This document shows, piece by piece, positions 2,821 through 61,221 of a stretch of DNA of 64,000 nucleotides. The notes under the pieces are model-generated. The model was not told the origin of the DNA. It did no database searches and was given only the letters and a program-made list of their open reading frames with translations. A program made the translations under genes and the position numbers. Source of the stretch: Camelus ferus (taxonomy: Eukaryota); NCBI RefSeq assembly GCF_009834535.1, contig NC_045699.1:17546001-17610000 (forward strand), given 5' to 3'. Positions within the stretch are counted from its first letter, which is position 1. Each line of letters begins with the position of its first letter.

Positions 2821-2824
2821 ATGG

Positions 2825-3070
2825 CAATGGCAATCCACCACACCCCTCACATTTTACACAGTTAGAGAACATCATCCTCAATGTCATCAGTGAATAGCTT
2901 GGCAGCCCTGGAGAGCTTTGGTGATGCAGATGACCGGCTGTGCAGCCTTTATCCTGCTGAGCACCTTCCCACAAATGAGATGCTTAAGTAGGACACGGTT
3001 GTCATCTCTGCACTTGTCTCAACTTTGTTTCCACTTATTTTTTCAACTTCTATTTGTGGGCATCAGAAAA
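2825..3070 (-). pseudogene. 5' remnant (promoter, 5'UTR, signal-peptide-like segment) of a type I IFN pseudogene
   Basis: Minus strand gaaggtgctcagcaggataaaggctgcacagccggtcatctgcatcacc...ctgccaagctattcactgatg aligns with the 5' end of the 20830-21377 pseudogene. 2990-3160 aligns with 21475-21630. It reads LPSYSLMTLRMMF, and no mature-domain homology follows. Confidence 0.45.
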
Positions 3071-3509
3071 CAACATAACTTCAACACTTCTTTTGAATTA
3101 TAACATTGGAAGTGAAATACACTCATGGAAAATGACAGAAGTCTCAACCCAGGTCTACACTAAGTATTTTAAATACTTTAATACAAGTACAGTGAAAAAA
3201 TTAAAAAACAAAAATAAGTATAATATGAATTAAATTAACCCAAAAATACTTAAAAATATATATAAAATGAAACACTGTGCTTTTAAAATATTCCCACTTT
3301 TCAGTTATTCGATACTTTCCCCACCACGTCAATGCTGATCCCCGAAAGACCCCAGGAGACTCACAGAGCATCTATGGGCGTACATCGTCCGGTCCCCTGC
3401 CCCGATGATGGCCGTACAAACTCACCCCCAGGGCGACACCAACTGATCCCTAGCACGCCCCCAAAACCATCCAAACATCCCTACGTGCCCATAGGCTTTT
3501 TCCTTGGTC

Positions 3510-8835: not shown

Positions 8836-9240
8836 CTAACCCGGGTAACAGCGTAAAAAGAGCAAGAGTGTAAAAAGCCCGGAAGTTACGCAACCGTTAC
8901 CTGTTAGCTACCAGATAAAAACGCCGCTGGCGAGGCCGCGACTTGCAAGCTCTTCAGCGTTCAGAACCTCGGAGAAAGAAGAGTTTTTCCATGCACTTTT
9001 AAAGCCGCATGTAATCGCTCACTTAGGGCGCGATGTACTTCCCCGCACGCTGCTGGAGCTTCTGAAACTGAAAACTCGAAAGTTGGCGTTTCGCAAACGC
9101 ACGGGATCCGAAGTCCTCCTGCGCCCTCTCGCGGTCGCCTAGAGAAACACCCTCTCCCAGGACCCAGCGAAAGAACCGTTCCCAAATTCTTTAGCGGGGT
9201 CCGAGCGCCACCTCGTGGCCTCATCGCGAATCACTGACAT
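8836..9240. promoter_or_regulatory. CpG-rich block B immediately upstream of IFN-delta copy 1
   Basis: Dense CpGs, ETS-type CCGGAAGT at 8879-8886, IRF/ISRE-like GAAACTGAAA at 9064-9073. Ends a few nt before the ATG. Paralogous to 25143-25552. Confidence 0.65.
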
Positions 9241-9245
9241 TCTCA

Positions 9246-9779
9246 ATGGCCCAGATCTGTGTGCTTGTGGCAAGAGTGATGCTCTGCTCCCTCCCTGCTT
9301 GCTCTCTTCCCAGGAACTTACCTAAGAGCCAGAGCCTAGAAAACAAGGAGATCGTCAGGCTTTTGAGACAGATGAAAAGGACCCCCCTTCACTCATGTCT
9401 AAAGGACAGCAGGGACTTCAAACTTCCCTGGAAAAGAGCCAATATCACCCAAAACCAGACGGCTCCAGGCCCCTGTTGCTACCATCAGATGCTCCAGCAG
9501 ATTTCCCAAGTCTTCAGCACAGAGCACAGCCATGCTGCTTGGGACAACACCTCCCTCCATAAACTACTCTCCAGTCTTGATCACAGCCAGGACCAACTGG
9601 AGCAGACTGAAGAAGGCAATCTAGACTGTCCCTTTTGGGGAACTGCTGTTCGGGAGTATTTCCAAGCAATTCATCTCTACTTGAAGGAAAAGGAATACAG
9701 CCCCTGTGCCTGGGAGATTGTCAGAGAGGAAACTAAAAAGCGCCTTTCCTTCATGAAACATCCGAAATGGAAAGCATGA
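9246..9779 (+). CDS. IFND: Interferon delta-like protein, 177 aa, intact
   Basis: Signal peptide plus [49 protein letters not shown]. The lack of mature Cys1 and the short C-D region match my recollection of porcine IFN-delta. Confidence 0.9.
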   Translation: MAQICVLVARVMLCSLPACSLPRNLPKSQSLENKEIVRLLRQMKRTPLHSCLKDSRDFKLPWKRANITQNQTAPGPCCYHQMLQQISQVFSTEHSHAAWDNTSLHKLLSSLDHSQDQLEQTEEGNLDCPFWGTAVREYFQAIHLYLKEKEYSPCAWEIVREETKKRLSFMKHPKWKA

Positions 9780-9964
9780 GTGAACAAAGTTATTTTTAGA
9801 GAGAAGGACACAATCGATTTTGTCAAGAAATACTTTTCTAATGGGATTTCTACATTCTGTGAAAGTTCTTGGGGGTTATTTGCTATTCCCAACATGTGAT
9901 GTTTGTTTTCTTACATAAAGGTTGTTAGGGCTGTATGTCACTAAAGACACTTTTCAGGGAACAT

Positions 9965-12400
9965 CGTGCTACCTGCTGTAACAGGGGAACTGAAAAGGAT
10001 CAGGAATTGAATCACGATAGAAACTTCTCTTTCCTTCTTTAGGAGAACAATGCAGGCATCTCTCATCCGATGACTTTTCTAGTTGGCTTCTTCTCAAGCA
10101 GGCCTCAGGGGCCTGGCTACCCTCGGCTCCCTGGCTTTGCTATACTCAACGTGGAACTGCACACGTGTCTCCACCACTTGAGTCTACTCCACTCAGACAA
10201 GGGAAAATGAATGGTGGGTGCCATGGGATGTTTTCAAGGCCCAGGACGGTACGGGGCAAGATCACTTCCACGCACACTACTGGGCCTGAATTTATGCTCA
10301 CGGGCGTCTAAGCGGAGAAGCTGGGAAACTACTGGGTGACTAACGGAAGAGGAGAGAAGCTCAGTGAATAAGACCACGTCTCACTTTCACACGATTTGTA
10401 CGAGTGATTATCCGGGTGGGAACAAACACCGACCAATATTCCTGCTTGCACACACGTTTGAAAAACCATCTGAGCCAAAGTCTGATTCCACAATTTCACC
10501 TTGGCAAAGTTGACCGGGATGTCCCTCCTTGGAGTTCACAGTATCACTGACTCTTGGAAAGAAGCATTCAAGTCAATAACCAAAGGCATACACTAACGAG
10601 GAAAATGCCCCTGACGTAGACACAGGCCATGTTGTTGCCTTATTTCCTGAGGGAGACATGAAAAGTACGATCACATCATTCCCTGCAAATACTAGAGGAC
10701 TTTAGTGACAGTGCAGACCGAGTCTTCCACTTACGACCAGGCCCGTGATTCTCATCTCGTTTTACCAACTACTGACCATAAAAAACTGAAGAAAATATTC
10801 CTGCAAACTAACTTTTACCAAGACCTCACACAAGATTCAAGTGTAACTTCCCTCGTAGATTAACAGGAAATTCACAGCGCGTCCTTAGACCAGTGTCTCC
10901 TCAGGGCACATGCATCTCGCACGGGCTGCTGTTCTTCTTTCTCCCGTGCTCACCGTCTTTGCTTCTACATGAGCCTGACTGAGCTCTTGCACTGAGCTGC
11001 GACGCAGAGCACTGTCATGCCTGACGTTCCTTCATACTCCTAAGAGCCGATTTTTGCACCAGCGGGCGCACTCTCATTCCCGGCGAGCCCGCATGAATTA
11101 GGAATCAGCTCTCACTGGAATCTTTCCGTATTAGGCCATTAAATTTCAGATTTCCCGAAGCCCTTTCAGAGGTCCTACTCCCTAGCTGTTCTTTTCAACC
11201 AAAAGGAAACCCCCTTTGTAATTAAGTCAGAACGCTATAAAGACTGATTATTATCATGGAAAGAATGGACTTTCAGCTCCCCTCCTGAATTCATTTCTTT
11301 GGCAGTGGAAGTTACTTAACCTCGGTTCTGCACATGTCGATCTTTAAATCATACGTATGTGCGTATGTGACCACCATGGACAAGTCAGCTGTGTAGTAAC
11401 CGGGCTCTGTCTATTCCCTCTGGTATCCTCTGCAACAGGCCCAGGTACAAAACAGCAAGGCAAGGGACGAAGAGACACTCTCTAATCAATTAGAATGACT
11501 GTTGGCTTAGCCATCCAAGGCGATCTCTACTTCTGTTTCCTCAGAAGCTGAGAAATGTCTAAAATGAACATCATGATTTTCGAAAACTGTTTTTGAAAAG
11601 AAGAAAACAATCTCCTCTCTTAAATGATTCGGTAACATAATTGAAAAGATCTGTGTAACTTTCCTTGGAGTATATGCTATTCTCAACTTATAAAGTTTTT
11701 TTTTTTAATGGAAATGGATTTAGGAGAGTAGGTTGTTTTTCATTTTGACTTTCCTTTTATTTTTGTTAGAAAAAAAAACTTGTCAGTTAACTTTATGCTA
11801 GCTGCTGCATCAGGAAAACCGAACGCTGTCAGGAATTTGATCATCATAGAAATTTACCTTTCCTTCCTTTGAGAGCACGATCCAAGCCTTCCCGATCAGA
11901 TGAACAGTCTGGTTACCTCTCCTCCAGAGTGACTCAGGGACCTAAGAACCCTCTGTTTTGTGGATTTTCCACAATCAACGTGTGGCTCCAAAGTCCCCTG
12001 TAGCACTTGGGTCTAGTCCACTCAGCGGTAACGGGAAGAGTATGGTGGATCACATGGGATGTTTTCAGGGGCCAGGACAGTACAGGGCAAGATGACTTCT
12101 GCTCACATTACACGGCCTGAATTTATGCTCATGGCAATCCAAGCGCAAAGATGTTGGGAAGCTTCTGGACGGCTCACGGAAGAGGAGACACTTTCAAGGC
12201 ATAAGACCGCTTTTCATTTTTACACTATTTGCCCTAATGAATTTCTGGGTGGGGTTGGAGGAAAAAAACAAGGTTCTTGCTTGCACACAGTTTATTAAAA
12301 ACCAAACTGACCCCAGTTCTTATTATACAACTTCAGCTTGGGGAAGATGACTTGGATGTCGCTCAGAGTTCACAGCTTCATAGACTGTTTGAAGAAAGCC
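9965..12400 (+). repeat. Diverged direct duplication (about 9965-10560 vs about 11800-12400), origin unknown
   Basis: Shared strings such as atgggatgttttca.g..ccaggac.gtac.gggcaagat.acttc and gcctgaatttatgctca at 10222-10300 and 12055-12130. Confidence 0.75.
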
Positions 12401-13419
12401 TACAAGTTGATTCCCAAAGGCATAAATAAGCTCAGGAGGAAAAAAAATCTACTTCGTTTTCATTCTATCTCTTATTATCATCATGATTTGATTCCCTTCC
12501 TGAATATCCATTGAGCGGCTGAAACAATAGGGAGTGAAATACACATCTGAGAATGTGGAGGAAGATGGTTTCCCTCCCTGTAGGTGTTTGCAGACCCCTG
12601 GGAGGTAGTCTGAGGAGGGGACAAGTCAGGTCAGGCCTCAGTCTCATCTACTGAATGTCAACTACTCTCCCATATAGAGTTTTCTTTTGTAAGAACTGTT
12701 AACAGAAAAGTACACCTATAAAAGGAGACACTACAGGATTCATCGTGCACACGTTCCCATCACCAACTTCAACTACTTTCACTTACTTTCATCTATATCC
12801 TCCCGTTACCTGCTACCTGATGACTCTGTAGCTAATCCCCGAAATCCTAGGACTTAACCAATTCATGTTTCATAATAGATTTCAGTCGGTTGAATTATGA
12901 ATGAAAAGAAAGATAATGTAGTATTTTAAAGAGTTAAGTACTTAAAAATAATGGTGAAGAAAATAATCAAATTTCTCCAATGATTTTGAACAGTTATGAA
13001 TGACTTTTATCTATAAAATTTTTAATACAGTATTTGTATAAATTTCATTTGAAAATGTCAATTGACACATTCCTATTCATACAGGTAAACGTCTTCCATT
13101 CTAAGTCACTCTTGAAAATCAGCTTTAAAGTTAAATTAGAAGTTAATAGCTTTTACGTTTAATGTACAGCTTAAGTGTTGTTTTGTCATTCTTAACCCTG
13201 CACTGACTACAGAGTAAGCTCTGCACTTCCCGTTCCCTAGGTATAAAGGAGAGACCTCCACGGCGTATACAAATGGATACACAGTATATACGTGATATCG
13301 TAATCAACTGATGAAAGGAAGTAGGAGAAAATATCAAAAAGGTTCCTTGGGTAGGGAAAGGAGGCAATGATGAAACAAAAAGGGCTTAGAAACGCTGCCC
13401 TAACCCACTGGGAGAGTGC

Positions 13420-13495
13420 AAACTGAAAAGCAAAAACAGAAGTAGAAAGTAAGAGGAAACATTCAGAAAATGGAAACAACCGGGTCCCCATTTAA
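13420..13495 (+). promoter_or_regulatory. IFN-alpha virus-responsive promoter (GAAA/IRF cluster plus TATA-like CATTTAAG)
   Basis: gaaaagcaaaaacagaagtagaaagtaagaggaaacattcagaaaatggaaac followed by catttaag about 100 nt before the ATG, as in known IFNA promoters. Confidence 0.8.
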
Positions 13496-13593
13496 GACAC
13501 AGGCACAAAGGCAGGTCTTCAGAGAACCTTCAGACACCAGGGCTCACAGAGTCACCCACCTCGGCCAGGCCAGCAGCACCTGCAGTGTCCCCA

Positions 13594-14148
13594 ATGGCTC
13601 GACCCTTGTCTGTACTCATGGCCCTGGTGGCGCTCAGCTTCGACTCCATCTGCTCTCTGGGCTGTGACCTGCCTCAGACCCACAGCCTGGCCACCAGGAG
13701 GACCTTGGTGCTCCTGGGACAAATGAGGAGAATCTCCCCCTCCTCCTGCCTGAAGGACAGACAGGACTTTGGATTCCCTCAGGAGGTCCTTGGTGGCCAC
13801 CGGCTCCAGAAGGCTCAAGCCATCTCTGTCTTCCATGAGCTGGTCCAGCAGCTCTTCCTCCTCTTCAGCACAGAGGGCTCGTCTGCTGCCTGGGAGGACA
13901 GCCTCCTGCACAGACTCTGCACTGGGCTTGATCAGCAGCTGACGGAGCTGGAAGCCTGTCCGAAGCAGGAGGCGGAGCTGCAAGGGCGTCCCCTGCTGAA
14001 TGAGGACCCCATCCTGGCTGTGAGGAGATACTTCCACAGAATCACTCTCTATCTGCAAGAGAAGAAATACAGCCCTTGTGCCTGGGAGATCGTCAGAGCA
14101 GAAGTCATGAGATCCTTCTCTTCAGCGAGACACTTGCAAGAAAGATGA
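13594..14148 (+). CDS. IFNA: Interferon alpha, 184 aa (true ATG at 13594; the ORF track starts at an upstream GTG)
   Basis: 23-aa signal, then CDLPQTHSL...[13 protein letters not shown]...EACPKQE...[36 protein letters not shown]. All four canonical cysteines are present. Confidence 0.95.
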
Positions 14149-14354
14149 AGCAGGAAGGAATGACAGAGGCCTGGTTCAACATGGAAATGATTCTCACTGA
14201 CCAACAAGACCACACGGCCACCCGCCCGGCCGGGTCAAAGACCCTCATTCCTTCTGGAATCAGGACACGAACTGGATCAATCTGTCAAATGTTGTCGGGA
14301 GAATTCAGCAACATCACGTTCTGCTCTGCGGGCACTCGTCTCTCACAGACGCCC

Positions 14355-14410
14355 ATGCTCATCTATCTATTTATTTAAATATTTATTTATTTAACTATTT
14401 ATAAGCTTTA
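14355..14410 (+). promoter_or_regulatory. AU-rich element cluster in the IFNA 3'UTR
   Basis: Overlapping ATTTA pentamers (tatttatttaaatatttatttatttaactatttata). Confidence 0.75.
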
Positions 14411-16377
14411 AATGATTTTTGTCCCTGTAATATGATGTGTACCCGTACACTGTGGCTAATTGAAAAAAAATACACTCTTTGTATTTACTCAATGTATTAT
14501 TTTTTGTTCATTAAATTTTTTTCTATACAAAACTTCTTGTACTTGTTTATTATTTAAAAAAGAAACACCATGTCTGATTGTAACCTCATTAAACAGTGGA
14601 TAGTACCATTCACTACTTCATTACTACGTCACTCAAGGTATAAGTAAAAAGAGATTTTCTCTAAGCCAGGTTATACGTTGCCCGAAGGACATAGAGGTCG
14701 ATGTGACAAATTCAACCCTACTTTCTTGCATCATTGAGTTTTGTAGAGAAACCATCCAAAAAATAACAATCATAATTAATATGAATTATAAAAGTGTTAT
14801 ACTGAGAAGAAGTGGAATAAAAAGTTATTTCTCAGCAGAAGCTGGAACAAGGAAAGTCAAGAAATACAAATGAAAGTAGTAGATATCCTCTGCATTTGAG
14901 TGCTCAACATCTGATTGCAAATAGCTTTTGGAAAAGTGGACTTTTGAGTCTGCAATCCACAAGCAATTACATGAGTTGAAAGCCAAGGAACACAAGTAGT
15001 CCTGTGTGAAAAGTGAATAGAAGGAGAAAAGGACTTAAAACATTGACTCACAGAACCTTCAACTAATAAAGGGAGGCAAGATCCACCAAGGAAACTGAGG
15101 AAGAATGGCCGTAAGTTAACAGGATGAAAGGGAATAGGTTCCCACGAACCTATTTAAAAGGTGAAAACTGCTCCCCAGAATCGCACCGTCGCAAATGTGA
15201 ACTGAAACTGCCCTCTGCATGGGGAAAACAGCTGTCCCTGGTGATCTTACTGGGAGCTGGTCTGGTCGGGTTGATCACCAGACAGCACACTGGGCGAAGG
15301 GTGAATATGAGAGATGAGTGACAATATACGTAGGAACCAGCTTTGAAAGATTTGCCTTCTGAAATGCAGGACAGAAATAGAGCGGTGACTAGAAACAACT
15401 GTGGATGTTTTTGTTTCTTCCTGCACAGTTGTCTCTTTTCAAATATATCTATCTCTAGATAGATTTCATGGATTTGATGTATTGGCAAATCACATTCATA
15501 TGTTAGTATTTTATTGATTTTAAATCATGACATATTGAATTACTTACAATGAGAACTTTTGATTAGTTTGATTAATAGGATGTTGAATGTCACTAAGCTG
15601 CTCTGTTGTTGAAACCGTCAACCGCACGGGAAACAGATGGAACTGACCTCGGTGAGAGCGTGCTTGGTGGAATTAATCAGCAGAAACCGTACTGGAGCAG
15701 CCGCAAGGCGGTAACACAAGAGGAGAATCCCACTGTCACTTTTTTGCCACTTTACTTCTTTCACTCTCATCAGAGTCAGATTTGCATTTGTTTTCCTTTT
15801 GCCTCAGTGCATCCAAGGGCAATGACTGCTTTCTAAGAATGCTGAAGGGAGGACAAAAACAATGACGTATGGAGAATTATGGGAAATAGTGGCATGTTTC
15901 CAGTTTTACTTCCCTATTTTGGTACTAACCTCGAGATGAAACAGAAAGTACTTCAGAAGTAACAAGACAACTCTTGCCCAGGAAAAACCTTTCAATTAAA
16001 ACCAGCATATAAAATTTTAAAGACTCTAGAACTAGTAAAGCAAAGACGGCTAGTTTTCCCGAGCATCAAGTACTGGCCTCGCAGCCCTACATTTTCATTG
16101 TGAGACAGAGAATGATGAATCAAGAAGTTCAGCAGAAATGCGCTGACCGAATAATCTAGGGACGCTTCTTAATTACTCCAACATAAGCCTCCAACGGTAG
16201 GTAAATCATCACTGAATCCCTGGGGCCAGCTCAGAAACTTGAGAATATAGTAAATATTCAACAGTTTAACGAACTGAACTCAAGACAGAAATCAACATTT
16301 AGCAAAATGCAATTCCCTTCAGGTAAAAAGGAGAAAGAAAAAGGGTAACTTTCCCAAAACCCTGTTCCTGTGCACGG

Positions 16378-16378
<1 letters not shown>

Positions 16379-16418
<40 letters not shown>
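16379..16418. repeat. (CA)n microsatellite
   Basis: Direct observation. Confidence 0.95.
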
Positions 16419-16419
<1 letters not shown>

Positions 16420-17093
16420 TGCATCATGTTTGGCTGGTTTCATCTGGAAGCTTTGGAAATACTTCAAACCTGTATATGCGATGAAAACAACAGAGGTTGT
16501 TCACAGAAACACCCTTAGATCCAGAACAGCTGATTGTTTTGGGGAAAAAAACAATTACCCTTGAATAAAAGTTGAAAGTGTGATGAGCTGACTCACGGCC
16601 ATCCACAAAAGAATGAGTTACCGGGGGTTCAGATGGAAGATGTGTGGCTGTGTTCACACTGAGCCGCAGGGTGAGATTACACGTGTGCTAATGAGTGAGG
16701 GGAGGTGGGGCCATAAAGGATAAACATTTTGTGGGTCTTGGAATTAGAACTGAGATGCCTGTGCGCACTCAAAAAAATGAAGAAATCAGCTACAAATTTT
16801 GAGAGAACAGCCTGAAGAGTCATTAGTAGGAAAACGTTGAAAGAGTGGAAAATGCCAGTTGCATTTCTGATCAGGAGGCTCTAGTGAAGCACTTGCCACC
16901 TGCTCATACTTTTGTAGACAAAATCCGACAGTCTCAGTCATTCATCATTTTATCTTGAGCAATTCACACGAACCCTGGATAACGAGAAAATTGTGAACAG
17001 GTCATAGACCTTTCTCCTTCGGCAGTTACTCATCAAATGGTCCCCATTCCTGAAAGGACAAATCCAGAGGAATGAGGAAGCTTGGCTGACTAT

Positions 17094-17491
17094 GGGAGAT
17101 GGATGGCAGCCAGCTCCGGAAGGCCCAGGCCATCTCTGTCCTCCACGAGATGCTCCAGCAGATCCTCAACCTCTTCCCTGCAGAGCGCTCCTCTGCTGCC
17201 TGCGACACCACCCTCCTGGACAAACTCCACACTGGACTCCATCAGCAGCTGGAGGACCTGGACACCTCTTTGGTGCAGGTGATGGGAGAGCAAGACTCTG
17301 CCCAGGGAAGGGCGGGCCCTACACTGGTGCTGAAGAGCTACTTCCAGGGAATCCATCTCTCCCTGAACGAGAAGACATACAGCGACGGTGCCTGGGAAAT
17401 TGTCCGACTGGAAATCATGAGATCCTTCTCTTCATTAACCAACTTGCAAGAAAGGTTAAGAACTAAGGATGGAGACCTGGGGTCACCTTGA
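17094..17491 (+). pseudogene. IFNW: 5'-truncated IFN-omega pseudogene
   Basis: Near-identical to 33607-34194 from GGAGATGG-ATGGCAGCCAG onward, including the 3'UTR. No promoter, signal peptide or helix A upstream. W>C (ACDT) and C>G (SDGAW) changes at conserved sites. Confidence 0.88.
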
Positions 17492-18599
17492 CATGATTCT
17501 CCCTGACCGAGATGCCATGTCACCCTTGCACATTGGTCTGTGGTCACTTCAAAAGACTTACTTTTGCTTTAGCCACAGAATGTATTGAATTAACTCAGTT
17601 AATACTTTGTCTGTAGAAATGAGCAAGGATATGGTAAAATTCCTGAGCTTAAGGATCATCAGTCCCTATGCAATGACTTCCCTGTTATTTATTGTTTATT
17701 TATTTATATTTATTCTTGTAACTTAGATATTTACATTTTCATATAGATGTTACATTGTGTTAAAATTTTAAAAATATGCTCACCTTGCCACTTCATTAAG
17801 TTTGCATGTTGTTTTATGTATTAAATTCTATGAAAGAAAACTTCTTTGTTTTTTTTTAATTCTGAAAACCTAAAACCATATATTTTCTATAGAAATCTCT
17901 CTCAGAATACTATTTGTCCATTATATCTTATGGAACAGTTCTACCACTTTCTAGGAACTGCTCTTCACATAGTGGAGTTCCACGGAATTGAGAGGAGTCC
18001 TGGAAATTACGATAAATGTAGAGTCCTTATGTCACAGGTGTCACGGATTTATATCCAGTTAGCAAAGAGTGGTTGGTAGGTAAACATCTGAGAGGTGTCA
18101 CCTCCTCCAGTGAAGTTGGAACACATAGGGTATTGATCGGCTGCTGCTGCTGCCAGCTCTTCCTCTTCCTCGCACCTGCTCCCCAGTCCTGCTTCCCTGA
18201 ATCGCTCACTTCCTTATCCAGTAACTTCGCTCCCTCCAACTTACTGCCCATCCACACATGTGCTCTCGTTCTGTGCTGCTTTCTAGCTTCAAGGTGTCTC
18301 TTACAGTGGAAGCCACAGGAAGAGAGCAAAAGTGAAAGGAGAGCTCGAGGATTTTCAAAACCTCAGGTAGAAGGAGCCGGGGACATGGGGCTGGATCCCA
18401 GCTCTGTTATTAATAACTGTATGACCCTGAGAAACAACACAAATACCATGCGCCCTAGTTTTCTCATCTTTAATATAGGGACAGGAATCATAATGTTCCA
18501 TAGGATTAGTGTAAGATTTCAGTGTACTTACTTGTAAATTAAAGTTTTTTCAACACCATTGCAGCAGATACTAAACGTTCATATTAAAAGAGATCATAC

Positions 18600-18668
18600 G
18601 TATATATATATATATACATATATATATATGTATACCCACACACACACACACATACACACACACACACA
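18600..18668. repeat. (TA)n/(CA)n compound microsatellite
   Basis: Direct observation. Confidence 0.9.
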
Positions 18669-18699
18669 ATTTCCCTTTCATCACCCGGGGCCCCTTTAA

Positions 18700-19285
18700 G
18701 TCTCGGAGGGTCCCAATATCTAGTCCAGAGTAGAATCCTTTCCCTGAACTGTGTTTCTCCTCAGAAACATTCCTCAGTCTGAGAACACAGCACAACACGC
18801 CCTGCTACCGAGCCGTCAAGCCCCGAAGAAACCCACGCGGGTGTGAACCGCTCGGGCCAAAGCCTCCTGCCAGGAAGGGAAGGACGGGCGCGGGCAGGTG
18901 CGGAAAACGAAGGGCTCTGGGCGGAGCCGCGGCCGGCGGGGACCGGGAGGCCCGAGAAGGAAGCCGACTCACCGCTCTCGCCGCCCCCACGCGCTCGCGG
19001 GGCCCCGGCGGCGCCTCTCCCGGGCCGGGGCTCCTGCCCGCGGCGAACCCCACGTCCTCCCCGTGGCCGCAGCGCCCGAGTCCGTGGGGGCGGGACGCCC
19101 AGGCGGGTCCCGCGGGGTGGGCGGTGCCTGTCGGGCCGGCACGGCGAGCTCGCGCGCCCCCTCCCGGCCGGCGGGGCGCGGTGGAGACAGCTCTGCGCGC
19201 GTTGCTGAGTGGAGGAGGGCTGCTCAGCTTCACTGTGGTCCAAGGGCAGCGCTACATTTCTGGACTCTTGGTCTCTCTAGTTGTT
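18700..19285. promoter_or_regulatory. CpG-island-like block A, copy 2 of 3
   Basis: Core nearly identical to 46090-46530. Minus-strand donor GTGAGT at 18967-18972. Confidence 0.75.
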
Positions 19286-19850
19286 CACATGCACCACGTT
19301 TCTCCGATTGCTACAATCTGGCTTCAGCCTCCCTGTTCTCTTGAAACTGCTCGGCCAAGGTTTACACTAAACTACATGTTGCCTAACTCAGAGATGACTT
19401 GTCAGGCAGCTGTCGGCGGACATCTCAGAAGTATCGGACGCCTACGTGTTCCCACGACCATTTTAAAGTCTGACCTACATCTGGTTCCTACGTCACCACC
19501 ATCCTCTGCTTTTCTGCTCCTCCTCCTCCCCTTCCTTTGTGGACCACTCCCTCTCCTCTCAGGGAATGGCGGGGTTCCTCAAGAGTCTATGCTAGTTCCC
19601 ACACTTCATCTCCTCTGCACAGAGTCCCACCTCCCAAACAGTCCCAAGTGTCATCTCTAGGATTACGACTTCCGTATGCATGTCTTAGCCAAGAGTCTCA
19701 TCTCCAAACATTTGTAATTATCTCCAAACCCATATAGCTACCTCCTACCCCAGAACATCTCCACATACCATGTCCACAATTGACCGTCATGCAATTACCT
19801 GGCGAATCCCTGCACACCCCTGAGATGCCAGCACACCAGTTGCTTCTTCT

Positions 19851-19887
19851 GCAGTCAAATGCTCTCCCACTGAGCTGTACCCCCATT
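19851..19887 (-). pseudogene. Retroposed 5' half of tRNA-Cys(GCA), tailless retropseudogene
   Basis: Minus strand GGGGGTACAGCTCAGTGGGAGAGCATTTGACTGCAGA differs at two positions from my recollection of mammalian tRNA-Cys(GCA) and stops just after the anticodon. It is flanked by the perfect 13-bp direct repeat AGTTGCTTCTTCT (19838-19850, 19888-19900), with no poly(A). Confidence 0.85.
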
Positions 19888-20829
19888 AGTTGCTTCTTCT
19901 GGAAACATTCCATGACCCATGCAAGGCCCACGTGCTCCCAGCATCCCGTACTTTCTCTATCACAGCATCAGCCTCCTTCCATTCACTGCTCTGTTGCACA
20001 CATCCTCACCAAACGGGGAGTTCTGTGAAGGCAGGCAGCACGTCTACTCCTTTCATTGTGTCTGGCACCAGCACAGGGCCAACAAAGACAAAGGGGTAGT
20101 CACTACTTATTGGCTGAAGCTTAAATTCCATGAGCCTATAAATATACTTTGCTTCAGTTCTCTTTCACACAAGGACAGAAATTCAATCGACAAGCATTAG
20201 ACATGTGTCCTCCAGGAAACTGAATCGCTCCTGTTGCTACAACATGCCTTGTGCATCTCCTTCATAGCCCTAGAAAGGCTTCCCTCCTATTTACTTACTC
20301 TTTAAGGCCTGTCTTCTCTGCCAAAGTGCCCTATTTAAGAAAGTAGTACTTCTTTCTTAAGAGGAAGAGTTTATCTACCATTGTACTCACAAGTCAATTG
20401 CTGGGTGCAGAGATAACTGAAATTATTTTAAAACTCAATGAGATGAATAAAACTATGTTCCACTTGGATTTTAAGGCAGATTCAAGGTTTAAGGACACTT
20501 TGTATATCTTTAAGAATATGAGTAAGAACTAACATTTAAATATACCTTTGAAACCCCCATAGACAAGGGAAACAAGACCATAAAGCTGAGCATACAATGC
20601 GATGAAGAAATTCCATAAATACAACAATCATCATAGAAAAAAATGTCTATTTATTACAAATTTAAAACGCAGAGTTTCTCAATTCAAAGTATAGTTTCCT
20701 CTAAGTATTGCAAAACAATCTGCCGGGATGACTCAGTGCATTTACAACTGAAGAACAAAGGGCCTTGAACTGTGTGAATATTGACCCGCTTGAGGCCACA
20801 TGGGAGGCACTAAGACTCAGTGGTGAAAG

Positions 20830-21377
20830 GCTGCGCGCAGGTCTCCTTTCCAGCTCCGGGGTTTTCTCGGAGATGATGACACAGAGAGAGCACATACTGA
20901 CTTTCTCATCTTCCAGTTTGACAGAGTCCCGGGCACAGCAGCTCTGTGCTTTCTTCCCACATCGAGCGGGGCCTTGGAAGGAGCTCTTCAAAGTCTGGCT
21001 GGAGTCCTCACTGCCCAGGGGGTATTTTCCTCCCCACCTCCTGCTCCAGCCTGGTCTCCAGATCCTCCCTCTGCTGATGCAGCCCAGTGAGGGATTTAGG
21101 CTGTTTGGGCTGAAGAGGCTGAAGGCCTGCTGGAGCATCTCATGAAAGAAGAGGTGGCCTGAGCGCTTGGGAACCGGCTGCTGTCCAGCTGGTTCTGGGG
21201 GAACTAGAAAACATGCTCGTCCTCCAGGCAGGGAAACAAGGAAGAGTCTCTCATCTGGTGCAGAACTGTGACGGTCTCCGGCTCTGGCGGGCCATGCTTC
21301 TGGGCCGGGTTACAGCTAAGGGTGTGGACAGACCTGGAGAGCACCGCCCTGCAGGTCCTCAGTGAGGAGGCTGGCAG
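20830..21377 (-). pseudogene. Divergent type I IFN pseudogene (subtype unresolved)
   Basis: Mosaic translation LSRSVHTLS-CNPAQKHG..VLHQMRDSSLFPCLEDEHVF*FPQNQLDSSRF..(fs)HEMLQQAFSLFS..(del)TGLHQQREDLETRLEQE..(fs)LGSEDSSQTLKSSFQG..CARDSVKLE. It has a stop and frameshifts, and no ATG (CTG at 21377). Confidence 0.8.
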
Positions 21378-25557: not shown

Positions 25558-26091
25558 ATGGCCCAGATCTGCGTGCTTGTGGCAGGAGTGATGCTCTGCT
25601 CCCTCCCTGCTTGCTCTCTTGCCAGGAACTTGCCTGAGATCCAGAGCCTAGAAAACAAGGAGATCCTCAGGCTTTTGAGACACATGAAACGGACCCCCCT
25701 TCACTCATGCCTAAAGGACAGGAGGGACTTCAAACTTCCCTGGGAAAGAGACAATATCGCCCAAAACCAGACGGCTCAAGGCCCCTGTTCCTACCATCAG
25801 ATGCTCCAGCAGATTTTCCACCTCTTCAGCACAGAGCACAGCCATGCTGCTTGGGACAACACCTCCCTAAATAAACTACTCTCCAGTCTGGATCTCAGCC
25901 TGCACCAACTGGAGCAGACTGAAGAAGGCAATCTAGACTGTCCCTTTTGGGGAACTGCTGTTCGGGAGTATTTCCAAGCAATTCATCTCTACTTGAAGGA
26001 AAAGGAATACAGCCCCTGTGCCTGGGAGGTTGTCAGAGTGGAGACTACAAAGCGCCTTTCCCTCATGAAACCTCTGAAATGGAAATCATGA
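25558..26091 (+). CDS. IFND: Interferon delta-like protein, 177 aa, intact paralogue
   Basis: 26 amino-acid differences from the 9246 copy by hand count. Same IFN-delta motifs (LPWERDNI, CSYHQMLQQIFHLF, NLDC). Confidence 0.9.
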   Translation: MAQICVLVAGVMLCSLPACSLARNLPEIQSLENKEILRLLRHMKRTPLHSCLKDRRDFKLPWERDNIAQNQTAQGPCSYHQMLQQIFHLFSTEHSHAAWDNTSLNKLLSSLDLSLHQLEQTEEGNLDCPFWGTAVREYFQAIHLYLKEKEYSPCAWEVVRVETTKRLSLMKPLKWKS

Positions 26092-33606: not shown

Positions 33607-34194
33607 ATGGCCTCTGTGCTCTCTCTAGTGACGGCCTTGCTAGTGTTCAGCTATGGCCCTGGTGGGGCTCTGGGCTGTGACCTGCCTCAGAACCACGTGC
33701 TGGTTAGCAGGGAGAACTTCGTGCTTCTAGGCCAAATGAGGAGAATCTCCCCTTTCTTCTGCCTGAAGGACAGAAAAGACTTCCATTTCCCCCAGGAGAT
33801 GGTGGATGGCAGCCAGCTCCAGAAGGCCCAGGCCATCTCTGTCCTCCACGAGATGCTCCAGCAGATCTTCAACCTCTTCCATGCAGAGCGCTCCTCTGCC
33901 GCCTGGGACGCCACCCTCCTGGACAAACTCCTCACTGGACTCCATCAGCAGCTGGAGGACTTGGACACCTGTTTCGTGCAGGTGATGGGAGAGCAAGACT
34001 CTGCCCAGGGAAGGGCGGGCCCTACAGTGGTGCTGAAGAGCTACTTCCAGGGAATCCATCTCTACCTGAAAGAGAAGAAATACAGTGACTGTGCCTGGGA
34101 AATTGTCCGACTGGAAATCAAGAGATCCTTCTCTTCATTAACCAACTTGCAAGAAAGGCTAAGAATTATGGATGGAGACCTGGGGTCACCTTGA
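33607..34194 (+). CDS. IFNW: Interferon omega, 195 aa, intact
   Basis: 23-aa signal, then [36 protein letters not shown]..., with the omega-type 6-aa C-terminal extension DGDLGSP. Confidence 0.95.
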
Positions 34195-46009: not shown

Positions 46010-46570
46010 CTGGAGGATCCCATTACTTCGTACATTCATGTCCAGACTGTAGCTGCCTTTCCCCTTTCCCTGAATTCGACTTTCTCCTCAGAAACATTCC
46101 TCAGTCTGAGAACACAGCACAACACGCCCTGCTACCGAGCCGTCAAGCCCCGAAGAAACCCACGCGGGTGTGAACCGCTCGGGCCAAAGCCTCCTGCCAG
46201 GAAGGGAAGGACGGGCGCGGGCAGGTGCGGAAAACGAAGGGCTCTGGGCGAAGCCGCGGCCGGCGGGGACCGGGAGGCCCGAGAAGGAAGCCGACTCACC
46301 GCTCTCGCCGCCCCCACGCGCTCGCGGGGCCCCGGCGGCGCCTCTCCCGGGCCGGGGCTCCTGCCCGCGGCGAACCCCACGTCCTCCCCGTGGCCGCAGC
46401 GCCCGAGTCCGTGGGGGCGGGACGCCCAGGCGGGTCCCGCGGGGTGGGCGGTGCCTGTCGGGCCGGCACGGCGAGCTCGCGCGCCCCCTCCCGGCCGGCG
46501 GGGCGCGGTGGAGACAGCTTTGCGCGCACTCGATGAGCGGCGGTTTGGGGCGCAGTTTCACTGTGGTCCA
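46010..46570. promoter_or_regulatory. CpG-island-like block A, copy 3 of 3, abutting an IFN-delta-like pseudogene
   Basis: Core nearly identical to copy 2. Shared sequence ends at cactgtggtcca (about 46570), 18 nt before the ATG at 46588. Confidence 0.75.
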
Positions 46571-46587
46571 CTACATCACTGAATTGA

Positions 46588-47080
46588 ATGGCATAATCTA
46601 TTCGCTGATGGCGCTGGTGATGCTTTTGTTCCAGCCCCTCCTGCTCTCCCGGCGGTGAAAAGCAGGAAACCCTCATGCTTTTGAGATATCTGAAAAGGAT
46701 CGCTTCTCAGTCACACCAGAATGACAAGAACCACTTTAATTTTTTTCGCTACAAAATAGGAGATATCAACATCCAGAAGACGCAAGCCACCAGTTTCTGT
46801 CATCAGATTCTCAATCTGTTCCACATAAACTGCAGTACAGACCTTCAATCTGTTCCACACTGAAGACTGCAGTCAGTTTGGAGAAAGAGCTGCTGGTTAA
46901 GTTACTCTCTAACCAAACTGGAACTGGAGCAGAAGATGAAAGTAGACAATCTTCTGGCTTGTCCTTACTTGGGAATGTTGTCCAAAAGTACTTCTAAGAA
47001 ATCAGCAGTTATCTAAAGGAGAAGTAATACAGCTGCCTTGCCTTGGAGGTTGAGTGAAGTGCGCTTTTCCCCATTTAGTA
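46588..47080 (+). pseudogene. IFN-delta-like pseudogene
   Basis: ATG GCA TAA...LMALVMLLFQP...KQETLMLLRYLKRI...QKTQATSFCHQILNLFH...DNLLACPYLG...VVQKYF*EISSYLKEK*YSCLALEV. Several stops and frameshifts, plus a 34-bp internal duplication (tcaatctgttccaca at 46811 and 46845). The NLxCP-like motif ties it to the delta class. Confidence 0.72.
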
Positions 47081-56706: not shown

Positions 56707-57267
56707 TTACTCCCTGAGTTTTCCTATGAGCTTGTTAATGAAAAGAAAGTATCTCCTGATTTCCAGTTGGACAATTTCCCAGGCGCAGTCACTGTCTGTC
56801 TTCTCTTTCAGGAAGAGATGGATTCCCTGGAAGTAGCTCTTCAGCACCAGTGTAGGGCCTGCCCTTCCCTGGGCAGAGTCTTGCTCTCCCATCACCTGCA
56901 CCAAACAGGTGTCCAGGTCCTTCAGCTGCGGATGGAGTCCAGTGCGGAGATTGTCCAGGAGGGTGGTGTCCCAGGAAGCAGAGGAGCGCTCTGCGTGGAA
57001 GAGGTTGATCTGCTGGAGCATCTCGTGGAGGACAGAGACGGCCTGGGCCTTCTGGAGCTGGCTGCCATCCACATGCTCCTGAGGGAATTTGAATGCAATC
57101 CTGTACTTCAGACAGGAAAGAAGAGAGGTTGTCCCCATTTGGTCCAGATCTGTGAAGGTGTCCTGCTTTCCCAAGTCCAGGCTCTGAGGCAGGCCACAGA
57201 GAATGGAGGGGACAGGGCTGGGGAAGAGCATCACCAGTGCCATCAGGCAAGAGACTGAACGAGCCAC
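56707..57267 (-). pseudogene. Chimeric type I IFN (alpha-omega/mu-related ends, omega core): open 186-codon frame but GTG start, probably non-functional
   Basis: First codon is GTG (57267-57265). The core GSQLQKAQ...LEI is near-identical to the omega genes, and the tail FINKLIGKLRE matches the 60663 gene. One codon is deleted (QQI-NLF), with Q>P and Y>D at conserved positions. Confidence 0.75.
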
Positions 57268-57344
57268 TGGTAAGCTCCATGAGGAAGCTTCCAGGAGAGA
57301 TGAGAGATTATGAGCTTTTGTCCAGTTTCTCTAAGAATCTTCTG

Positions 57345-57410
57345 TCTGTGTGCCTCTATAGTGTTGAATCTGAAAGTTTTCATTTCATTTTTTCATTTTT
57401 CATTTCAGAT
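57345..57410 (-). promoter_or_regulatory. IRF-type promoter of the chimeric IFN
   Basis: Minus strand gaaatgaaaaatgaaaaaatgaaatgaaaactttc...ctatagagg. Confidence 0.6.
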
Positions 57411-58939
57411 CTTTGTACTTCCCCATTTTGGACTTTCCTTCTCTTCAAGGGCCTGGAAATTTGTCATTAGTTTCAACTCTTTCTTTATTCTACAATTGAA
57501 GTACAATTTGTTCATTAAAAAATTAGAAGTTCTAATTCAAAGGAATGCTTATCATCTTAACAAAAATCAACTTTGAGCTAATGATAGAGTTATCTGGGTC
57601 TTTCTTTCTGATGTTAAGATCAACTGTTAAGGAAGTGTTGCTTGGCTCCTGTAAAAAATCTTTCTCCTGCCTCTCGATAGCCCTCTTGGAAGAGCTGCTC
57701 AAGTGTGAAAGATACATGATCTTTAAATGCACGGATCTCACCTTATTCTTTGTTGTGGAATTTCTAATGTGTTAAATTCGGTCCTATTTACTCTGCTTAA
57801 TTGAGAAAATCACTGAACATTTACTATGTGCCAATCATTGCTCTGGGCTCAGCCTACACCAAGATGATTGAACCTCTAATCTTGCCCTCAAGGAGAGTAT
57901 AGTGCAGCTACCACTACCGTCCAGGTGTTGGAGCAGGTAGAGTGTGTCTCTGCTGCTTCCTGGCAGCCTCTTTGTCACAGCCCAGGCCACTGTCCTAGCT
58001 CGGTCCAAGAAATGGTTAAGCGAACTATTTTTTTCTTTGCTATTTTTATATAGTTTTCATATTGTTACCTCTTCCTCTGTATTTGTATTTTCATTTTTCA
58101 GAAGTTGTCCTAATGCTTCTGCAATCTTTTCTATTTCCACTTTGAGGTTTGTTGCAAAAAAAGGAAGAGAAAAGTTAAGTAGAAAGTAGAGGTAACATAT
58201 TTCCTTTCTGATTTTCAAGATGTCAAAACTTTCCTCTCTCATTTAACATTCCTAGAAAGTAAAAGCAAGCAGTTGTGAAAAAGTAATGCACACGGGGAAG
58301 TGGAAAGTAAATGCCGAAAATGGAAAAAAAAAGTGACAACTTCCCTGTTCAAATGACAAAATATCACTTAACCACACAAATCAGGGATTAAGCACTTTAC
58401 AGAGTGACAGATTTCAAACCAGCCCACGTGAGATTGTTTTAGCTGCAGACAGGGTCAGGAGGAGGGCAGCTGGCACTTTAAGGCAGGTTTTTAGCTAAAA
58501 GGCTAGTTTTCAGCTTTGCTAAATGAGAGAATCTATTTAGTTATTTGTCTGTTTAATTTTTTCACTATCCATGGAGATGATCAGATTCAGAGGATTTAAT
58601 CATACCAACTCACACTCAAAAGTGACCAGAGTATAGACTGGATGGCCATTTTATTCATGTGTGAGAAGTCAGCTCTTACCTGGAAGCTAATAGATGTTAG
58701 TCATTCGGACAGGGTATCGTGTTCACATAACAGATGACATTAGAAATAAAAATGTTTATTAGTGAGCTGAGAATTAAAGGAAGGGAAGCAGATTATGTCA
58801 GGGAAACTTCTATCCAGTTCCCATAGTTGGATGTGTCCCCATTATGTGAACAGCTAACAGATGTTGAATGCTTATTTTGTCCAAGCATTATAAGTACATT
58901 ACATCATCCAGTCTTCACAACAACCCAATGAAATAGATA

Positions 58940-60662: not shown

Positions 60663-61221
60663 ATGGCCCTCCCAGTCTCTGCGTTGTTGGCCCTGGTGAT
60701 GCTGTGTTCCAGCGTCTCTTGCTCCCTGGGGTGTGAGCTGCTGTGGAGCCATGGCAACCCAGAAACCGACACACTTTTGAAGCAAATGGGGAGAATCTCC
60801 ATTTGGTCCTGTCTGAAGGATAGGACTGACTTCAGATTTCCTGAGACACTTGTGGATGGGAACCAGGTTGAGAAAACACAAGCCATAGATGTCGTGCATA
60901 AGATGCTCCAGCAGACCTTCAACCTCTTCAGCACAAGTGACGCTGCAGCGGCTTGGGACAAGACCCTCCGGAAGAGATTCCTCGCGGTACTTGATCTGCA
61001 GCTGGATGGTCTAGGAGCCATGCTTGTCGGAGGAAAAGAAGGTGGGACAGTCATCCCTGGGAAGCGAGAATTCCAGCCTGGCTGTGAAGAGTTACTTCGA
61101 AGGAATCAGTCTCTACCTGAAAGAGAAAAAATACAGCCTCTGTGCCTGGGAGGTGGTCAGGGTGGAAATCAGAAATCGGTTGGTCCTTGTTAACAAGCTC
61201 ATCGGAAAACTCAGGAAATAA
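60663..61221 (+). pseudogene. IFN-alpha-omega/IFN-mu-like gene with a single +1 frameshift near 61020 (pseudogene or assembly error)
   Basis: Frame 1 reads MALPVSALLALVMLCSS...CLKDRTDFRFP...QLDGLGA. Removing one base (GCC-A-TGC) continues [66 protein letters not shown], giving 185 aa with four cysteines. The subtype call is from recollection of pig alpha-omega and horse mu sequences. Confidence 0.8.

What the first reader, a model, noticed from the sequence alone, without database searches (positions are those of the whole stretch)
56707..57280. Three-part chimeric interferon: mu/alpha-omega-type ends around an IFN-omega core, with a GTG start and open frame
Seen: about 56757-57072 is near-identical to the omega genes on the opposite strand. 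The N-terminus (CGLPQSLDLGKQDTF...CLKYR) and C-terminus (RRYFLFINKLIGKLRE; DNA AACAAGCTCATAGGAAAACTCAGG vs AACAAGCTCATCGGAAAACTCAGG at 61191-61214) are not omega. The frame is open for 186 codons and the IRF promoter is intact. However, the first codon is GTG, an out-of-frame ATG lies 13 nt upstream (57280), and the first in-frame ATG (57243) would leave a 15-aa signal peptide. Established: hybrid IFNs can have new receptor affinities, and gene conversion is common within IFN subtypes. Inference: a natural cross-subtype hybrid, either recently dying or weakly expressed.
Basis: partly seen in the sequence, partly recalled or inferred. Interest (0 to 1): 0.7.

Follow-up and report, generated by a model that had tools for sequence, protein, structure and literature searches.

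The report
Old mosaic interferon gene, camel copy
This camel interferon gene really is a patchwork (its own ends, a middle copied from interferon-omega genes), but the same patchwork gene exists in rhino, pangolin, armadillo, bat and tree shrew, and the camel family's copy has lost its normal start codon and is probably fading.

Summary
Window 56707-57267(-) is an open 186-codon type I interferon frame that starts at GTG. Its middle (about 57072-56734) is 93.8% identical to the omega genes on the other strand. Its ends are about 56% identical.

This is not a new camelid hybrid. It is the camelid orthologue of an old placental gene lineage, which I call T187 (about 187 aa). T187 always lies head-to-head with, and about 3.4-4.3 kb from, interferon-alphaomega (IFNAW/mu/chi) in the five species whose loci show both genes.

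- **Ends:** the N-terminal third groups across orders (support 99/99) and is sister to IFNAW.
- **Middle:** it groups with the same species' omega genes in camelids, pangolin and rhino, with near-coincident breakpoints. Synonymous divergence drops about tenfold there (0.75-0.91 to 0.014-0.107).

So gene conversion by omega genes recurs and is confined to the core.

The GTG start and a changed TATA box are shared by three Camelus species and alpaca, so they are not assembly errors. Rhino, pangolin, armadillo, bat and deer keep ATG.

Function is unresolved. The frame is open in four camelid species, but chance alone gives that about 12% of the time. dN/dS is 0.7-0.8, not different from 1. Camelus added an out-of-frame upstream ATG and radical substitutions. 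I read it as decaying, or at best weakly translated from Met9.

The parts
56707..57267 (-). Open 186-codon type I interferon frame (GTG to TAA). It is the camelid orthologue of the T187 lineage.
   Evidence: ORF listing. Pfam PF00143, 189.9 bits. Closest solved structure is human IFN-omega 3SE4_B, E = 1e-50. Orthologues are 98.9% (dromedary) and 96.1% (alpaca) identical over 11.5 kb of locus.
57265..57267 (-). GTG in place of the canonical ATG start.
   Evidence: Reads ACCAGTG in C. ferus, C. dromedarius and V. pacos, and ACCAATG in rhino, pangolin, armadillo, bat and deer.
57278..57280 (-). Upstream out-of-frame ATG that opens a 163-codon overlapping frame. Present in Camelus only.
   Evidence: Alpaca reads GTG and the other orders read TTG at this site.
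57241..57243 (-). First in-frame ATG (Met9). It is the start used by NCBI's 178/179-aa models and would leave a 15-aa signal peptide that keeps the hydrophobic core ALVMLF.
   Evidence: Whether it functions as a start was not tested.
57073..57264 (-). Lineage-specific N-terminal third: signal peptide, helix A and AB loop (CGLPQSLDLGKQDTFTDLDQM..SLLSCLKYR).
   Evidence: About 60% identical to omega and 81-85% to the rhino and pangolin orthologues. The T187 clade has 99/99 support and is sister to IFN-alphaomega at 100/99.
56734..57072 (-). Omega-type core, homogenised with IFN-omega paralogues by gene conversion.
   Evidence: 93.8% identity to 33607-34194(+). Camelid T187 and camelid omega form one clade at 100/99. 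T187 monophyly in the core is rejected, p = 1.3e-7. Core dS is 0.076 against 0.75 in the N-terminal part.
56844..56846 (-). Three adjacent bases (TGC, giving LVLK) that match the Camelus omega genes. Dromedary, alpaca T187 and alpaca omega all have CCG (LAVK). This marks a micro-conversion after the C. ferus/dromedary split.
57008..57009 (-). Site of a 3-bp deletion that removes the Phe of QQIFNLF (helix B). It is shared with C. bactrianus and absent in dromedary and alpaca.
   Evidence: This column is 95% conserved among 155 type I interferons.
56710..56733 (-). Distal part of the T187/alphaomega-type tail (KLIGKLRE). The whole tail, ..RRYFLFINKLIGKLRE, starts inside the core part above.
   Evidence: Tail alignment. 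The 3' UTR (*EGT*F) is shared with the rhino and pangolin orthologues.
57268..57480 (-). Orthologous promoter and 5' UTR: an AANNGAAA (IRF-type) cluster at about 57380-57410, and a TATA region at about 57355-57362 that has changed from TATTTAA to CTATAGA.
   Evidence: Alignable across camel, alpaca, rhino, pangolin, armadillo and bat and deer.
60663..61221 (+). Head-to-head neighbour: the IFN-alphaomega (IFNAW/mu/chi) orthologue. Here it is broken by a 1-nt insertion at 61013.
   Evidence: 70% identical to pig 'interferon-alphaomega precursor'. The insertion is absent in dromedary, in alpaca and in an older C. ferus protein, P0129.
33607..34194 (+). Intact IFN-omega gene (195 aa), a representative of the donor pool for the core.
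17099..17491 (+). 5'-truncated IFN-omega fragment, also 93% identical to the core.

Best explanation
The candidate is the camel copy of an old placental type I interferon gene. I call this lineage 'T187'; databases name it 'interferon omega-1-like'. It sits head-to-head with interferon-alphaomega.

The lineage has its own N-terminal third and its own C-terminal tail, both of which are sister to those of alphaomega. Its central ~105 codons are repeatedly overwritten by the same species' IFN-omega genes through interlocus gene conversion. I infer that conversion stays confined to the core because only the core is similar enough to pair. The ends, at about 60% identity, act as barriers, which would explain why the breakpoints nearly coincide in different orders.

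In the camelid stem the ATG start became GTG and the TATTTAA box changed. Camelus then gained an out-of-frame upstream ATG and several radical substitutions (Gln to Pro in helix C, Tyr to Asp, Asp to Ala). The two-humped camels also lost one conserved Phe codon.

My reading is that the camel gene is decaying (about 60%). At best it gives a little secreted interferon from Met9 (about 40%). The open frame owes much to conversion from working omega genes, which keeps refreshing about 60% of its length.

Shown: orthology, the mosaic structure, conversion, and the shared start loss. Inferred: the barrier mechanism and the functional decline.
For: **Orthology and synteny**
- The gene pair has the same arrangement in dromedary, alpaca, rhino and pangolin (about 3.4-3.6 kb apart) and armadillo (about 4.3 kb).
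- The promoter is alignable across five orders.
- The 3' UTR is shared with rhino and pangolin.

**Mosaic structure**
- Per-segment identities are given.
- Segment trees conflict with strong support.
- AU tests give p = 1.3e-7 and p = 2e-73.
- dS is 0.75-0.91 in the N-terminal part against 0.014-0.107 in the core.
- Breakpoints fall near codon 66 and codons 169-174 in camelids and pangolin (the rhino 5' break ranges over codons 51-67). The pangolin core is 100% identical to its omega inside the fitted tract.
- A further micro-conversion occurred in C. ferus.

**Start loss is real**
- GTG is present in three assemblies and also in the C. bactrianus protein models.

**Decline**
- The TATA box has changed.
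- The upstream ATG is found in Camelus only.
- Camelid T187 deviates at 4-5 of 43 highly conserved columns, against a median of 1 in 155 interferons, placing it in the top 3-8%.
- Core dN/dS among camelid orthologues is 1.0-1.2.
- The deer orthologue keeps ATG but has frameshifts in the unconverted N-terminal third, while its core stays open.
- The chance of all camelid frames staying open under neutrality is about 0.12, or 0.39 for the ends alone.
Against: - The frame is open in C. ferus, C. bactrianus, C. dromedarius and alpaca, with no frameshift in the unconverted ends.
- dN/dS in the ends among camelids is 0.15-0.4, though this rests on only 1-3.5 nonsynonymous and 2-3 synonymous changes and is not significant.
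- A two-ratio codon model finds no difference between the camelid and background branches: 0.80 against 0.72, p = 0.82.
- Met9 keeps the hydrophobic core of the signal peptide, and in alpaca it appears to be the first AUG of the inferred 5' UTR (no transcription start was mapped).
- All four cysteines are kept, and the IRF-type motif cluster persists.
- No expression data could be consulted.
- T187 as sister of alphaomega is only moderately supported (AU p = 0.029).
Confidence: 0.75

Rival explanations
1. Working interferon with a shifted start. Camelids translate the gene from Met9, giving a 178/179-aa precursor with a 15-aa signal peptide. The omega-type core with lineage-specific ends then gives a distinct receptor-binding profile. 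The changes seen would be adaptive or tolerated.
For: - The frame is open in four camelid species.
- The hydrophobic core of the signal peptide and all four cysteines are retained.
- dN/dS in the ends is low but not significant.
- No relaxation is detected by the branch model.
- Non-camelid T187 genes are under purifying selection: dN/dS in the ends is 0.37-0.44, p = 0.007-0.03.
- NCBI models use Met9.
Against: - Camelus fixed an out-of-frame upstream ATG 37 nt before Met9.
- The TATA box has changed.
- The Arg of VR.EI became Gln in all camelids; this column is 94% conserved. Further substitutions occur at conserved sites, and a conserved Phe is deleted.
- Core dN/dS is about 1.
- Open frames are expected by chance about 12% of the time.
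- The deer copy is already broken.
Confidence: 0.3
2. Recent camelid-specific cross-subtype hybrid. A single recent conversion, or a few, pasted an omega core into an alphaomega/mu-type gene in camelids.
For: - The core is 93-94% identical to the camel omegas.
- Camelid T187 cores nest inside the camelid omegas.
- The tail 24-mer matches the neighbouring gene at 23 of 24 bases.
Against: - The same mosaic, with breakpoints in the same places (less tightly placed in rhino), is present in rhino and pangolin. T187-type ends are present in armadillo, bat, dugong and tree shrew.
- The ends form their own orthologous clade, separate from alphaomega.
- The tail needs only point changes from the rhino orthologue.
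Confidence: 0.05
3. Artefact or selection, with no conversion. Either the omega core is an assembly collapse, or the core similarity simply reflects stronger protein constraint on the core.
For: The core is the most conserved part of all type I interferons.
Against: - The same structure appears in independent assemblies of C. ferus, C. dromedarius and V. pacos, and in other orders.
- Synonymous divergence drops about tenfold in the core.
- Cores cluster by species.
- The pangolin core is identical at every base in the fitted tract.
Confidence: 0.02

Closest known systems
IFN-omega (IFNW) genes, e.g. window 33607-34194(+); human IFN-omega structure 3SE4_B
   Same: The central ~105 codons are 92-98% identical to the same species' omega. 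The four cysteines and the PF00143 fold match. Public annotation calls the gene 'interferon omega-1(-like)'.
   Different: The signal peptide, helix A and AB loop are only about 60% identical. The tail is ..FLFINKLIGKLRE rather than ..[13 protein letters not shown] plus an extension. The protein is 186-187 aa rather than 195 aa. It sits at a fixed syntenic position next to IFNAW.
IFN-alphaomega = IFN-mu (horse) = IFN-chi/IFNX (cattle); pig IFNAW (PMC4221479, PMC7662560, PMC2680415)
   Same: It is the nearest relative of the candidate's N-terminal third (clade support 100/99) and of its tail. The two genes are adjacent, head-to-head. Their lengths are similar (185 against 187 aa).
   Different: IFNAW keeps its own core in every species (a separate clade, 100/99). 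The candidate's core is omega-type. The candidate falls outside the IFNAW clade even in the N-terminal tree.
Gene conversion and concerted evolution within IFNA, IFNW and IFND clusters (discussed in PMC2680415 and PMC4221479)
   Same: The same process: interlocus conversion between clustered intronless interferon genes, which produces species-specific clades.
   Different: Here the exchange crosses lineages, is restricted to an internal block, and recurs with near-coincident boundaries in several orders. The ends stay orthologous across placentals. I found no paper in the held library that describes this.
IFN-omega 'sub-clusters', 'outliers' and cross-genus clusters ('ungulate-mix', 'rhino-bat-horse mix') of Shields et al. 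2019 (PMC6603160)
   Same: These probably include T187 proteins, since they are omega-annotated peptides that cluster across genera.
   Different: That paper reports identity clusters only, with no mosaic structure, synteny or conversion analysis. Equating them with T187 is my inference and was not checked against their sequence list.

Membership tests
Type I interferon (alpha/beta domain, PF00143) | Full-length match to the Pfam Interferon profile above the gathering score | tested here: met
   189.9 bits against a cut-off of 26.8, covering profile positions 1-160 of 160. 3SE4_B matches at E = 1e-50.
Type I interferon (alpha/omega group) | Four cysteines forming the 1-99 and 29-139 disulfides | tested here: met
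   The Cys columns align with those of all omega, alpha and alphaomega sequences.
IFN-omega subtype | Groups with omega genes over the whole coding sequence; omega-type N-terminus (CDLPQNH.LVSR) and ..SFSS..LQERLR tail with extension | tested here: not met
   Only the core groups with omega. The N-terminal tree places the gene with T187 and alphaomega, and a camelid T187+omega clade is rejected (p = 2e-73). The tail is of the other type.
IFN-alphaomega / mu / chi (IFNAW) | Falls inside the IFNAW clade; IFNAW-type core | tested here: not met
   The IFNAW clade excludes it in both segment trees. The core is 66-72% identical to IFNAW. The real IFNAW orthologue is the neighbour at 60663-61221.
T187 lineage (my working name; 'omega-1-like', ~187 aa) | Head-to-head synteny with IFNAW, orthologous promoter and 3' UTR, C.LPQSLDLGKQETFT..SLLSCLK N-terminus and FLFIN.L..KLRK tail | tested here: met
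Functional (expressed, secreted) interferon gene | AUG start in the orthologous position, canonical TATA box, no upstream out-of-frame AUG | tested here: not met
   GTG start. TATTTAA changed to CTATAGA. An upstream ATG is present in Camelus.
Functional (expressed, secreted) interferon gene | Purifying selection on the coding sequence | tested here: inconclusive
   dN/dS is 0.72-0.80 for the whole gene, about 1 in the core and 0.15-0.4 in the ends. None of these is significant. The branch model shows no difference.
Functional (expressed, secreted) interferon gene | Induced transcript, translation and secretion, and IFNAR signalling | not testable with these tools
   No RNA, ribosome-profiling or signal-peptide tool was available.

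The most novel reading that the evidence does not exclude
T187 is a distinct, placental-wide interferon subtype that has been overlooked because it is filed under 'omega-like'. It behaves as a modular gene. The signal peptide, helix A, AB loop and C-terminal tail are inherited vertically, as a sister of IFN-alphaomega. The rest of the molecule is perpetually replaced by the current species' IFN-omega sequence, through conversion tracts whose ends are pinned by sequence divergence. If it is still active outside Cetartiodactyla, each species would carry an omega variant with a different receptor-facing N-terminal module. Camelids and deer would be two independent cases of its loss.
Probability: 0.45. 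Interest if true: 0.6.

Novelty: new variant of a known kind. Interest (0 to 1): 0.42.

Why it matters
Type I interferon subtypes are usually classified from whole-gene trees. This locus shows that one 'omega-like' gene is really a separate old lineage whose middle is kept omega-like by conversion. Whole-gene trees therefore misplace it and hide its orthology across mammals.

It is also a clean natural example of conversion tracts with similarly placed boundaries that recur in several orders. And it is a natural domain swap: omega helices B to E combined with a different helix A and AB loop, the IFNAR2-facing part. That could inform work on receptor-affinity tuning.

For camel immunology the practical message is one of caution. 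The annotated 'interferon omega-1(-like)' models of 178-241 aa at this locus rest on a gene without its normal start codon. They should not be counted as working omega genes without expression evidence.

Tried and rejected
- **Tail as a third, recent conversion from the neighbouring IFNAW.** Rejected. Against the rhino orthologue the camel 24-mer differs at 2 of 24 bases, and the bat orthologue shares AACAAG.
- **Codon branch model** (own GY94-type implementation, F3x4, 77 end codons). No difference between the camelid and other branches (0.80 against 0.72). It also could not exclude omega = 1, so its power was too low.
- **Pairwise Nei-Gojobori dN/dS among camelids.** Counts were too small to decide.
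- **Open-frame survival estimate.** P is about 0.12, so it is not evidence for function.
- **Literature.** The horse IFN-mu paper (PMC3868305) is not held. Searches for IFN-nu/IFNNP1 and for a described omega/alphaomega chimera found nothing relevant.
- **Earlier scan notes.** Nothing at this place. Genome-wide notes concern other loci only.
- **Not run.** Structure prediction and fold search were judged uninformative for the open questions. A third large homologue search and the representative search were judged not needed. No signal-peptide predictor was available.

Full report
**What is there.** The window is a camel type I interferon cluster.
- The flanks of the candidate are 98.9% identical to Camelus dromedarius over 11.5 kb and 96.1% identical to Vicugna pacos.
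- The database masks two models (P0121, P0122) as the window's own proteins.
- tblastn finds interferon genes or fragments at 9246, 13585, 17099, 21150(-), 25558, 33607, 56707(-) and 60663.
- The candidate, 56707-57267(-), is an open 186-codon frame beginning with GTG. It matches Pfam PF00143 over its full length (189.9 bits) and matches human IFN-omega 3SE4_B at E = 1e-50.

**Checking the observation.** Every coordinate statement holds.
- GTG lies at 57267, an out-of-frame ATG at 57280, an in-frame ATG at 57243 (Met9) and TAA at 56709-56707.
- Sliding-window identity to the omega gene at 33607 and the omega fragment at 17099 is 88-97% from about 57081 to 56765, and 35-73% on either side.
- A three-segment change-point fit puts the breaks at 57072 and 56734, with 93.8% identity inside, 55.9% outside and 2dlnL = 153.

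**The ends are not new.** A protein search returned full-length relatives of 186-190 aa. They share both the unusual N-terminus (C.LPQSLDLGKQETFTALDQM..SLLSCLKYR) and the tail (FLFIN.L.RKLRK). They come from black rhinoceros, pangolin, armadillo, dugong and Pteropus. A tree-shrew protein and a broken deer copy were found later.
- Synteny is conserved. In dromedary, alpaca, rhino, pangolin and armadillo this gene lies head-to-head with a 184-185-aa interferon, about 3.4-3.6 kb away (about 4.3 kb in armadillo). In armadillo the pair is tandemly repeated.
- That neighbour, window 60663-61221, is 70% identical to pig 'interferon-alphaomega precursor'. According to PMC4221479 and PMC7662560, this subtype is the same as horse IFN-mu and bovine IFN-chi/IFNX.
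- The 300 bp upstream of the candidate align across camel, alpaca, rhino, pangolin, armadillo and bat. The 3' UTR is shared with rhino and pangolin.
- The candidate is therefore the orthologue of an old placental gene, which I call T187 for convenience.

**The mosaic is general and is made by conversion.** I built an 18-sequence codon alignment of T187, omega, alphaomega and one alpha. The segments disagree sharply.
- Codons 1-63: T187 forms one clade (99/99) that is sister to alphaomega (100/99). Omega is separate (97/96).
- Codons 64-172: T187 groups with the same lineage's omega genes. Support is 100/99 in camelids, 100/99 in pangolin and 90/89 in rhino. Alphaomega stays apart at 100/99.
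- AU tests reject T187 monophyly in the core (p = 1.3e-7) and reject a camelid T187+omega clade in the N-terminal part (p = 2e-73). Placing T187 with omega rather than alphaomega in the N-terminal part is rejected only weakly (p = 0.029).
- Synonymous divergence between T187 and the same species' omega is 0.75-0.91 in codons 1-65. In codons 66-169 it is 0.076 (camel), 0.092 (alpaca), 0.107 (rhino) and 0.014 (pangolin). A tenfold drop in dS inside one gene pair cannot be explained by protein constraint.
- Breakpoints fall at about codon 66 and codons 169-174 in camelids and pangolin. In rhino the 3' break is the same, but the 5' break is looser (fitted at codon 52, range 51-67). The pangolin tract is identical at every base.
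- Within camelids the three T187 cores form a clade nested among camelid omegas. The main homogenisation therefore predates the Camelus/alpaca split.
- A three-base patch at 56846-56844 matches the Camelus omegas only in C. ferus, which shows later micro-conversion.
- My mechanistic inference is that tracts are confined to the block that is already similar, because the ~60%-identical ends cannot pair.

**The tail.** Against the rhino orthologue, the camel 24-mer differs at 2 of its 24 bases, and a third difference lies in the last codon. The tail is thus the lineage's own, shared by descent with alphaomega, and no third donor is needed.

**Start codon and promoter.**
- ACCAGTG is shared by C. 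ferus, C. dromedarius and alpaca, and C. bactrianus models read ..LPVARSV... Rhino, pangolin, armadillo, bat and deer have ACCAATG.
- The change is therefore real and camelid-specific, and it predates the Camelus/alpaca split.
- NCBI models either start at Met9 (178/179 aa) or add mutually inconsistent upstream exons (210, 237 and 241 aa).
- The TATTTAA box kept in the other orders is CTATAGA in camelids. The AANNGAAA cluster persists and is enlarged in Camelus.
- The out-of-frame upstream ATG is found only in Camelus.

**Is it still a working gene? Unresolved, leaning no.**

Evidence for function:
- The frames are open in four camelid species.
- No indel has occurred in the unconverted ends.
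- The hydrophobic core of the signal peptide is retained after Met9.
- All four cysteines are kept.
- dN/dS in the ends is 0.15-0.4, but this rests on no more than 3.5 changes per class.
- Non-camelid T187 genes do show purifying selection (ends 0.37-0.44, p = 0.007-0.03).

Evidence against function:
- Whole-gene dN/dS between Camelus and alpaca is 0.72-0.80, and core dN/dS is 1.0-1.2. Neither differs from 1.
- Camelid T187 deviates at 4-5 of 43 columns that are at least 93% conserved in 155 interferons. The reference median is 1 and the 95th percentile is 4. The deviations include the Arg of VR.EI and, in C. ferus, a deleted Phe. One of them, D55Y, is a lineage trait shared with rhino and pangolin.
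- Camelus-specific changes in the core are 6 nonsynonymous to 1 synonymous (my count from the variable-site table).
- Under neutrality all the frames would stay open about 12% of the time, or 39% if only the ends count.
- The deer orthologue shows what happens without constraint. Its unconverted N-terminal third has several frameshifts, while its omega-like core remains open.

My own two-ratio codon model found no camelid-specific relaxation, but it had little power.

**Comparison and novelty.**
- Gene conversion in interferon clusters is well known (PMC2680415, PMC4221479).
- Shields et al. noted omega 'sub-clusters' and cross-genus clusters (PMC6603160). They did not describe a mosaic.
- In the held library I found no description of this lineage or of its pinned, recurrent core conversion. 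The library is incomplete, so I cannot claim priority.
- The gene itself is already annotated in public genomes as 'interferon omega-1(-like)'.
- I rate it a new variant of a known kind, of moderate interest.

**Earlier scan notes.** The notes concern other loci of the same genome. One independently says the genome is a Camelus, which agrees with my flank comparison. Others report conversion in other inverted gene pairs, which is context only.

Noticed in passing
window 60663-61221 (+), insertion at 61013: The IFN-alphaomega orthologue next door carries a single extra A (GGTCTAGGAGCC against GGTCTGGAGCC) that shifts the frame. Dromedary, alpaca and an older C. ferus protein (P0129, 185 aa) lack it. 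It is either an assembly error or a private allele.
   Followed up: partly
window 17099-17491 (+): An omega gene fragment lacks its first ~65 codons. Its homology begins almost exactly where the candidate's omega-type core begins (17100 corresponds to 57071). A dromedary annotation (P0012, 289 aa) fuses the dromedary counterparts of this fragment and the alpha gene at 13585.
   Followed up: partly
L004:10001-10564 versus L009 (pangolin): The pangolin T187 and a pangolin omega gene are identical at every base across roughly codons 66-169. This indicates a very recent conversion.
   Followed up: yes
L010:5950-6492 (Cervus elaphus): The deer T187 orthologue keeps ATG and TATTTAA, but has several frameshifting indels in the signal peptide and helix A region. 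NCBI models it as a 163-aa 'interferon tau-like' protein from an internal ATG.
   Followed up: partly
L005 (armadillo) 798-20573: The alphaomega/T187 head-to-head pair is tandemly repeated: there are three T187 copies and two alphaomega copies within 20 kb.
   Followed up: no
proteins P0213 (Rhinolophus), P0043 (Tamandua), P0215/P0218 (Dasypus), P0017: Other mixes exist. One has a T187-type signal peptide with an omega-type helix A and a T187-type tail. Others have an omega-type N-terminus with a T187-type tail, or a T187-type N-terminus with an omega-type tail. Tract extents therefore differ between lineages.
   Followed up: partly
window 9246-9779 (+) and 25558-26091 (+): Two intact 177-aa type I interferon ORFs, 85% identical to each other and about 40% identical to alpha and omega. 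They belong to another subtype, which I did not identify.
   Followed up: no
window 2241-2893, 18761-19344, 46088-46676: Three copies of a GC-rich element give near-identical long spurious ORFs on both strands (..RGRASSP.RPDRHRPPRGTRLGVPPPRTRALRPRGG..). Its nature is unknown.
   Followed up: no
window 21032-21377 (-): A short, degraded interferon-like fragment, 35-40% identical at the protein level to omega and alpha.
   Followed up: no
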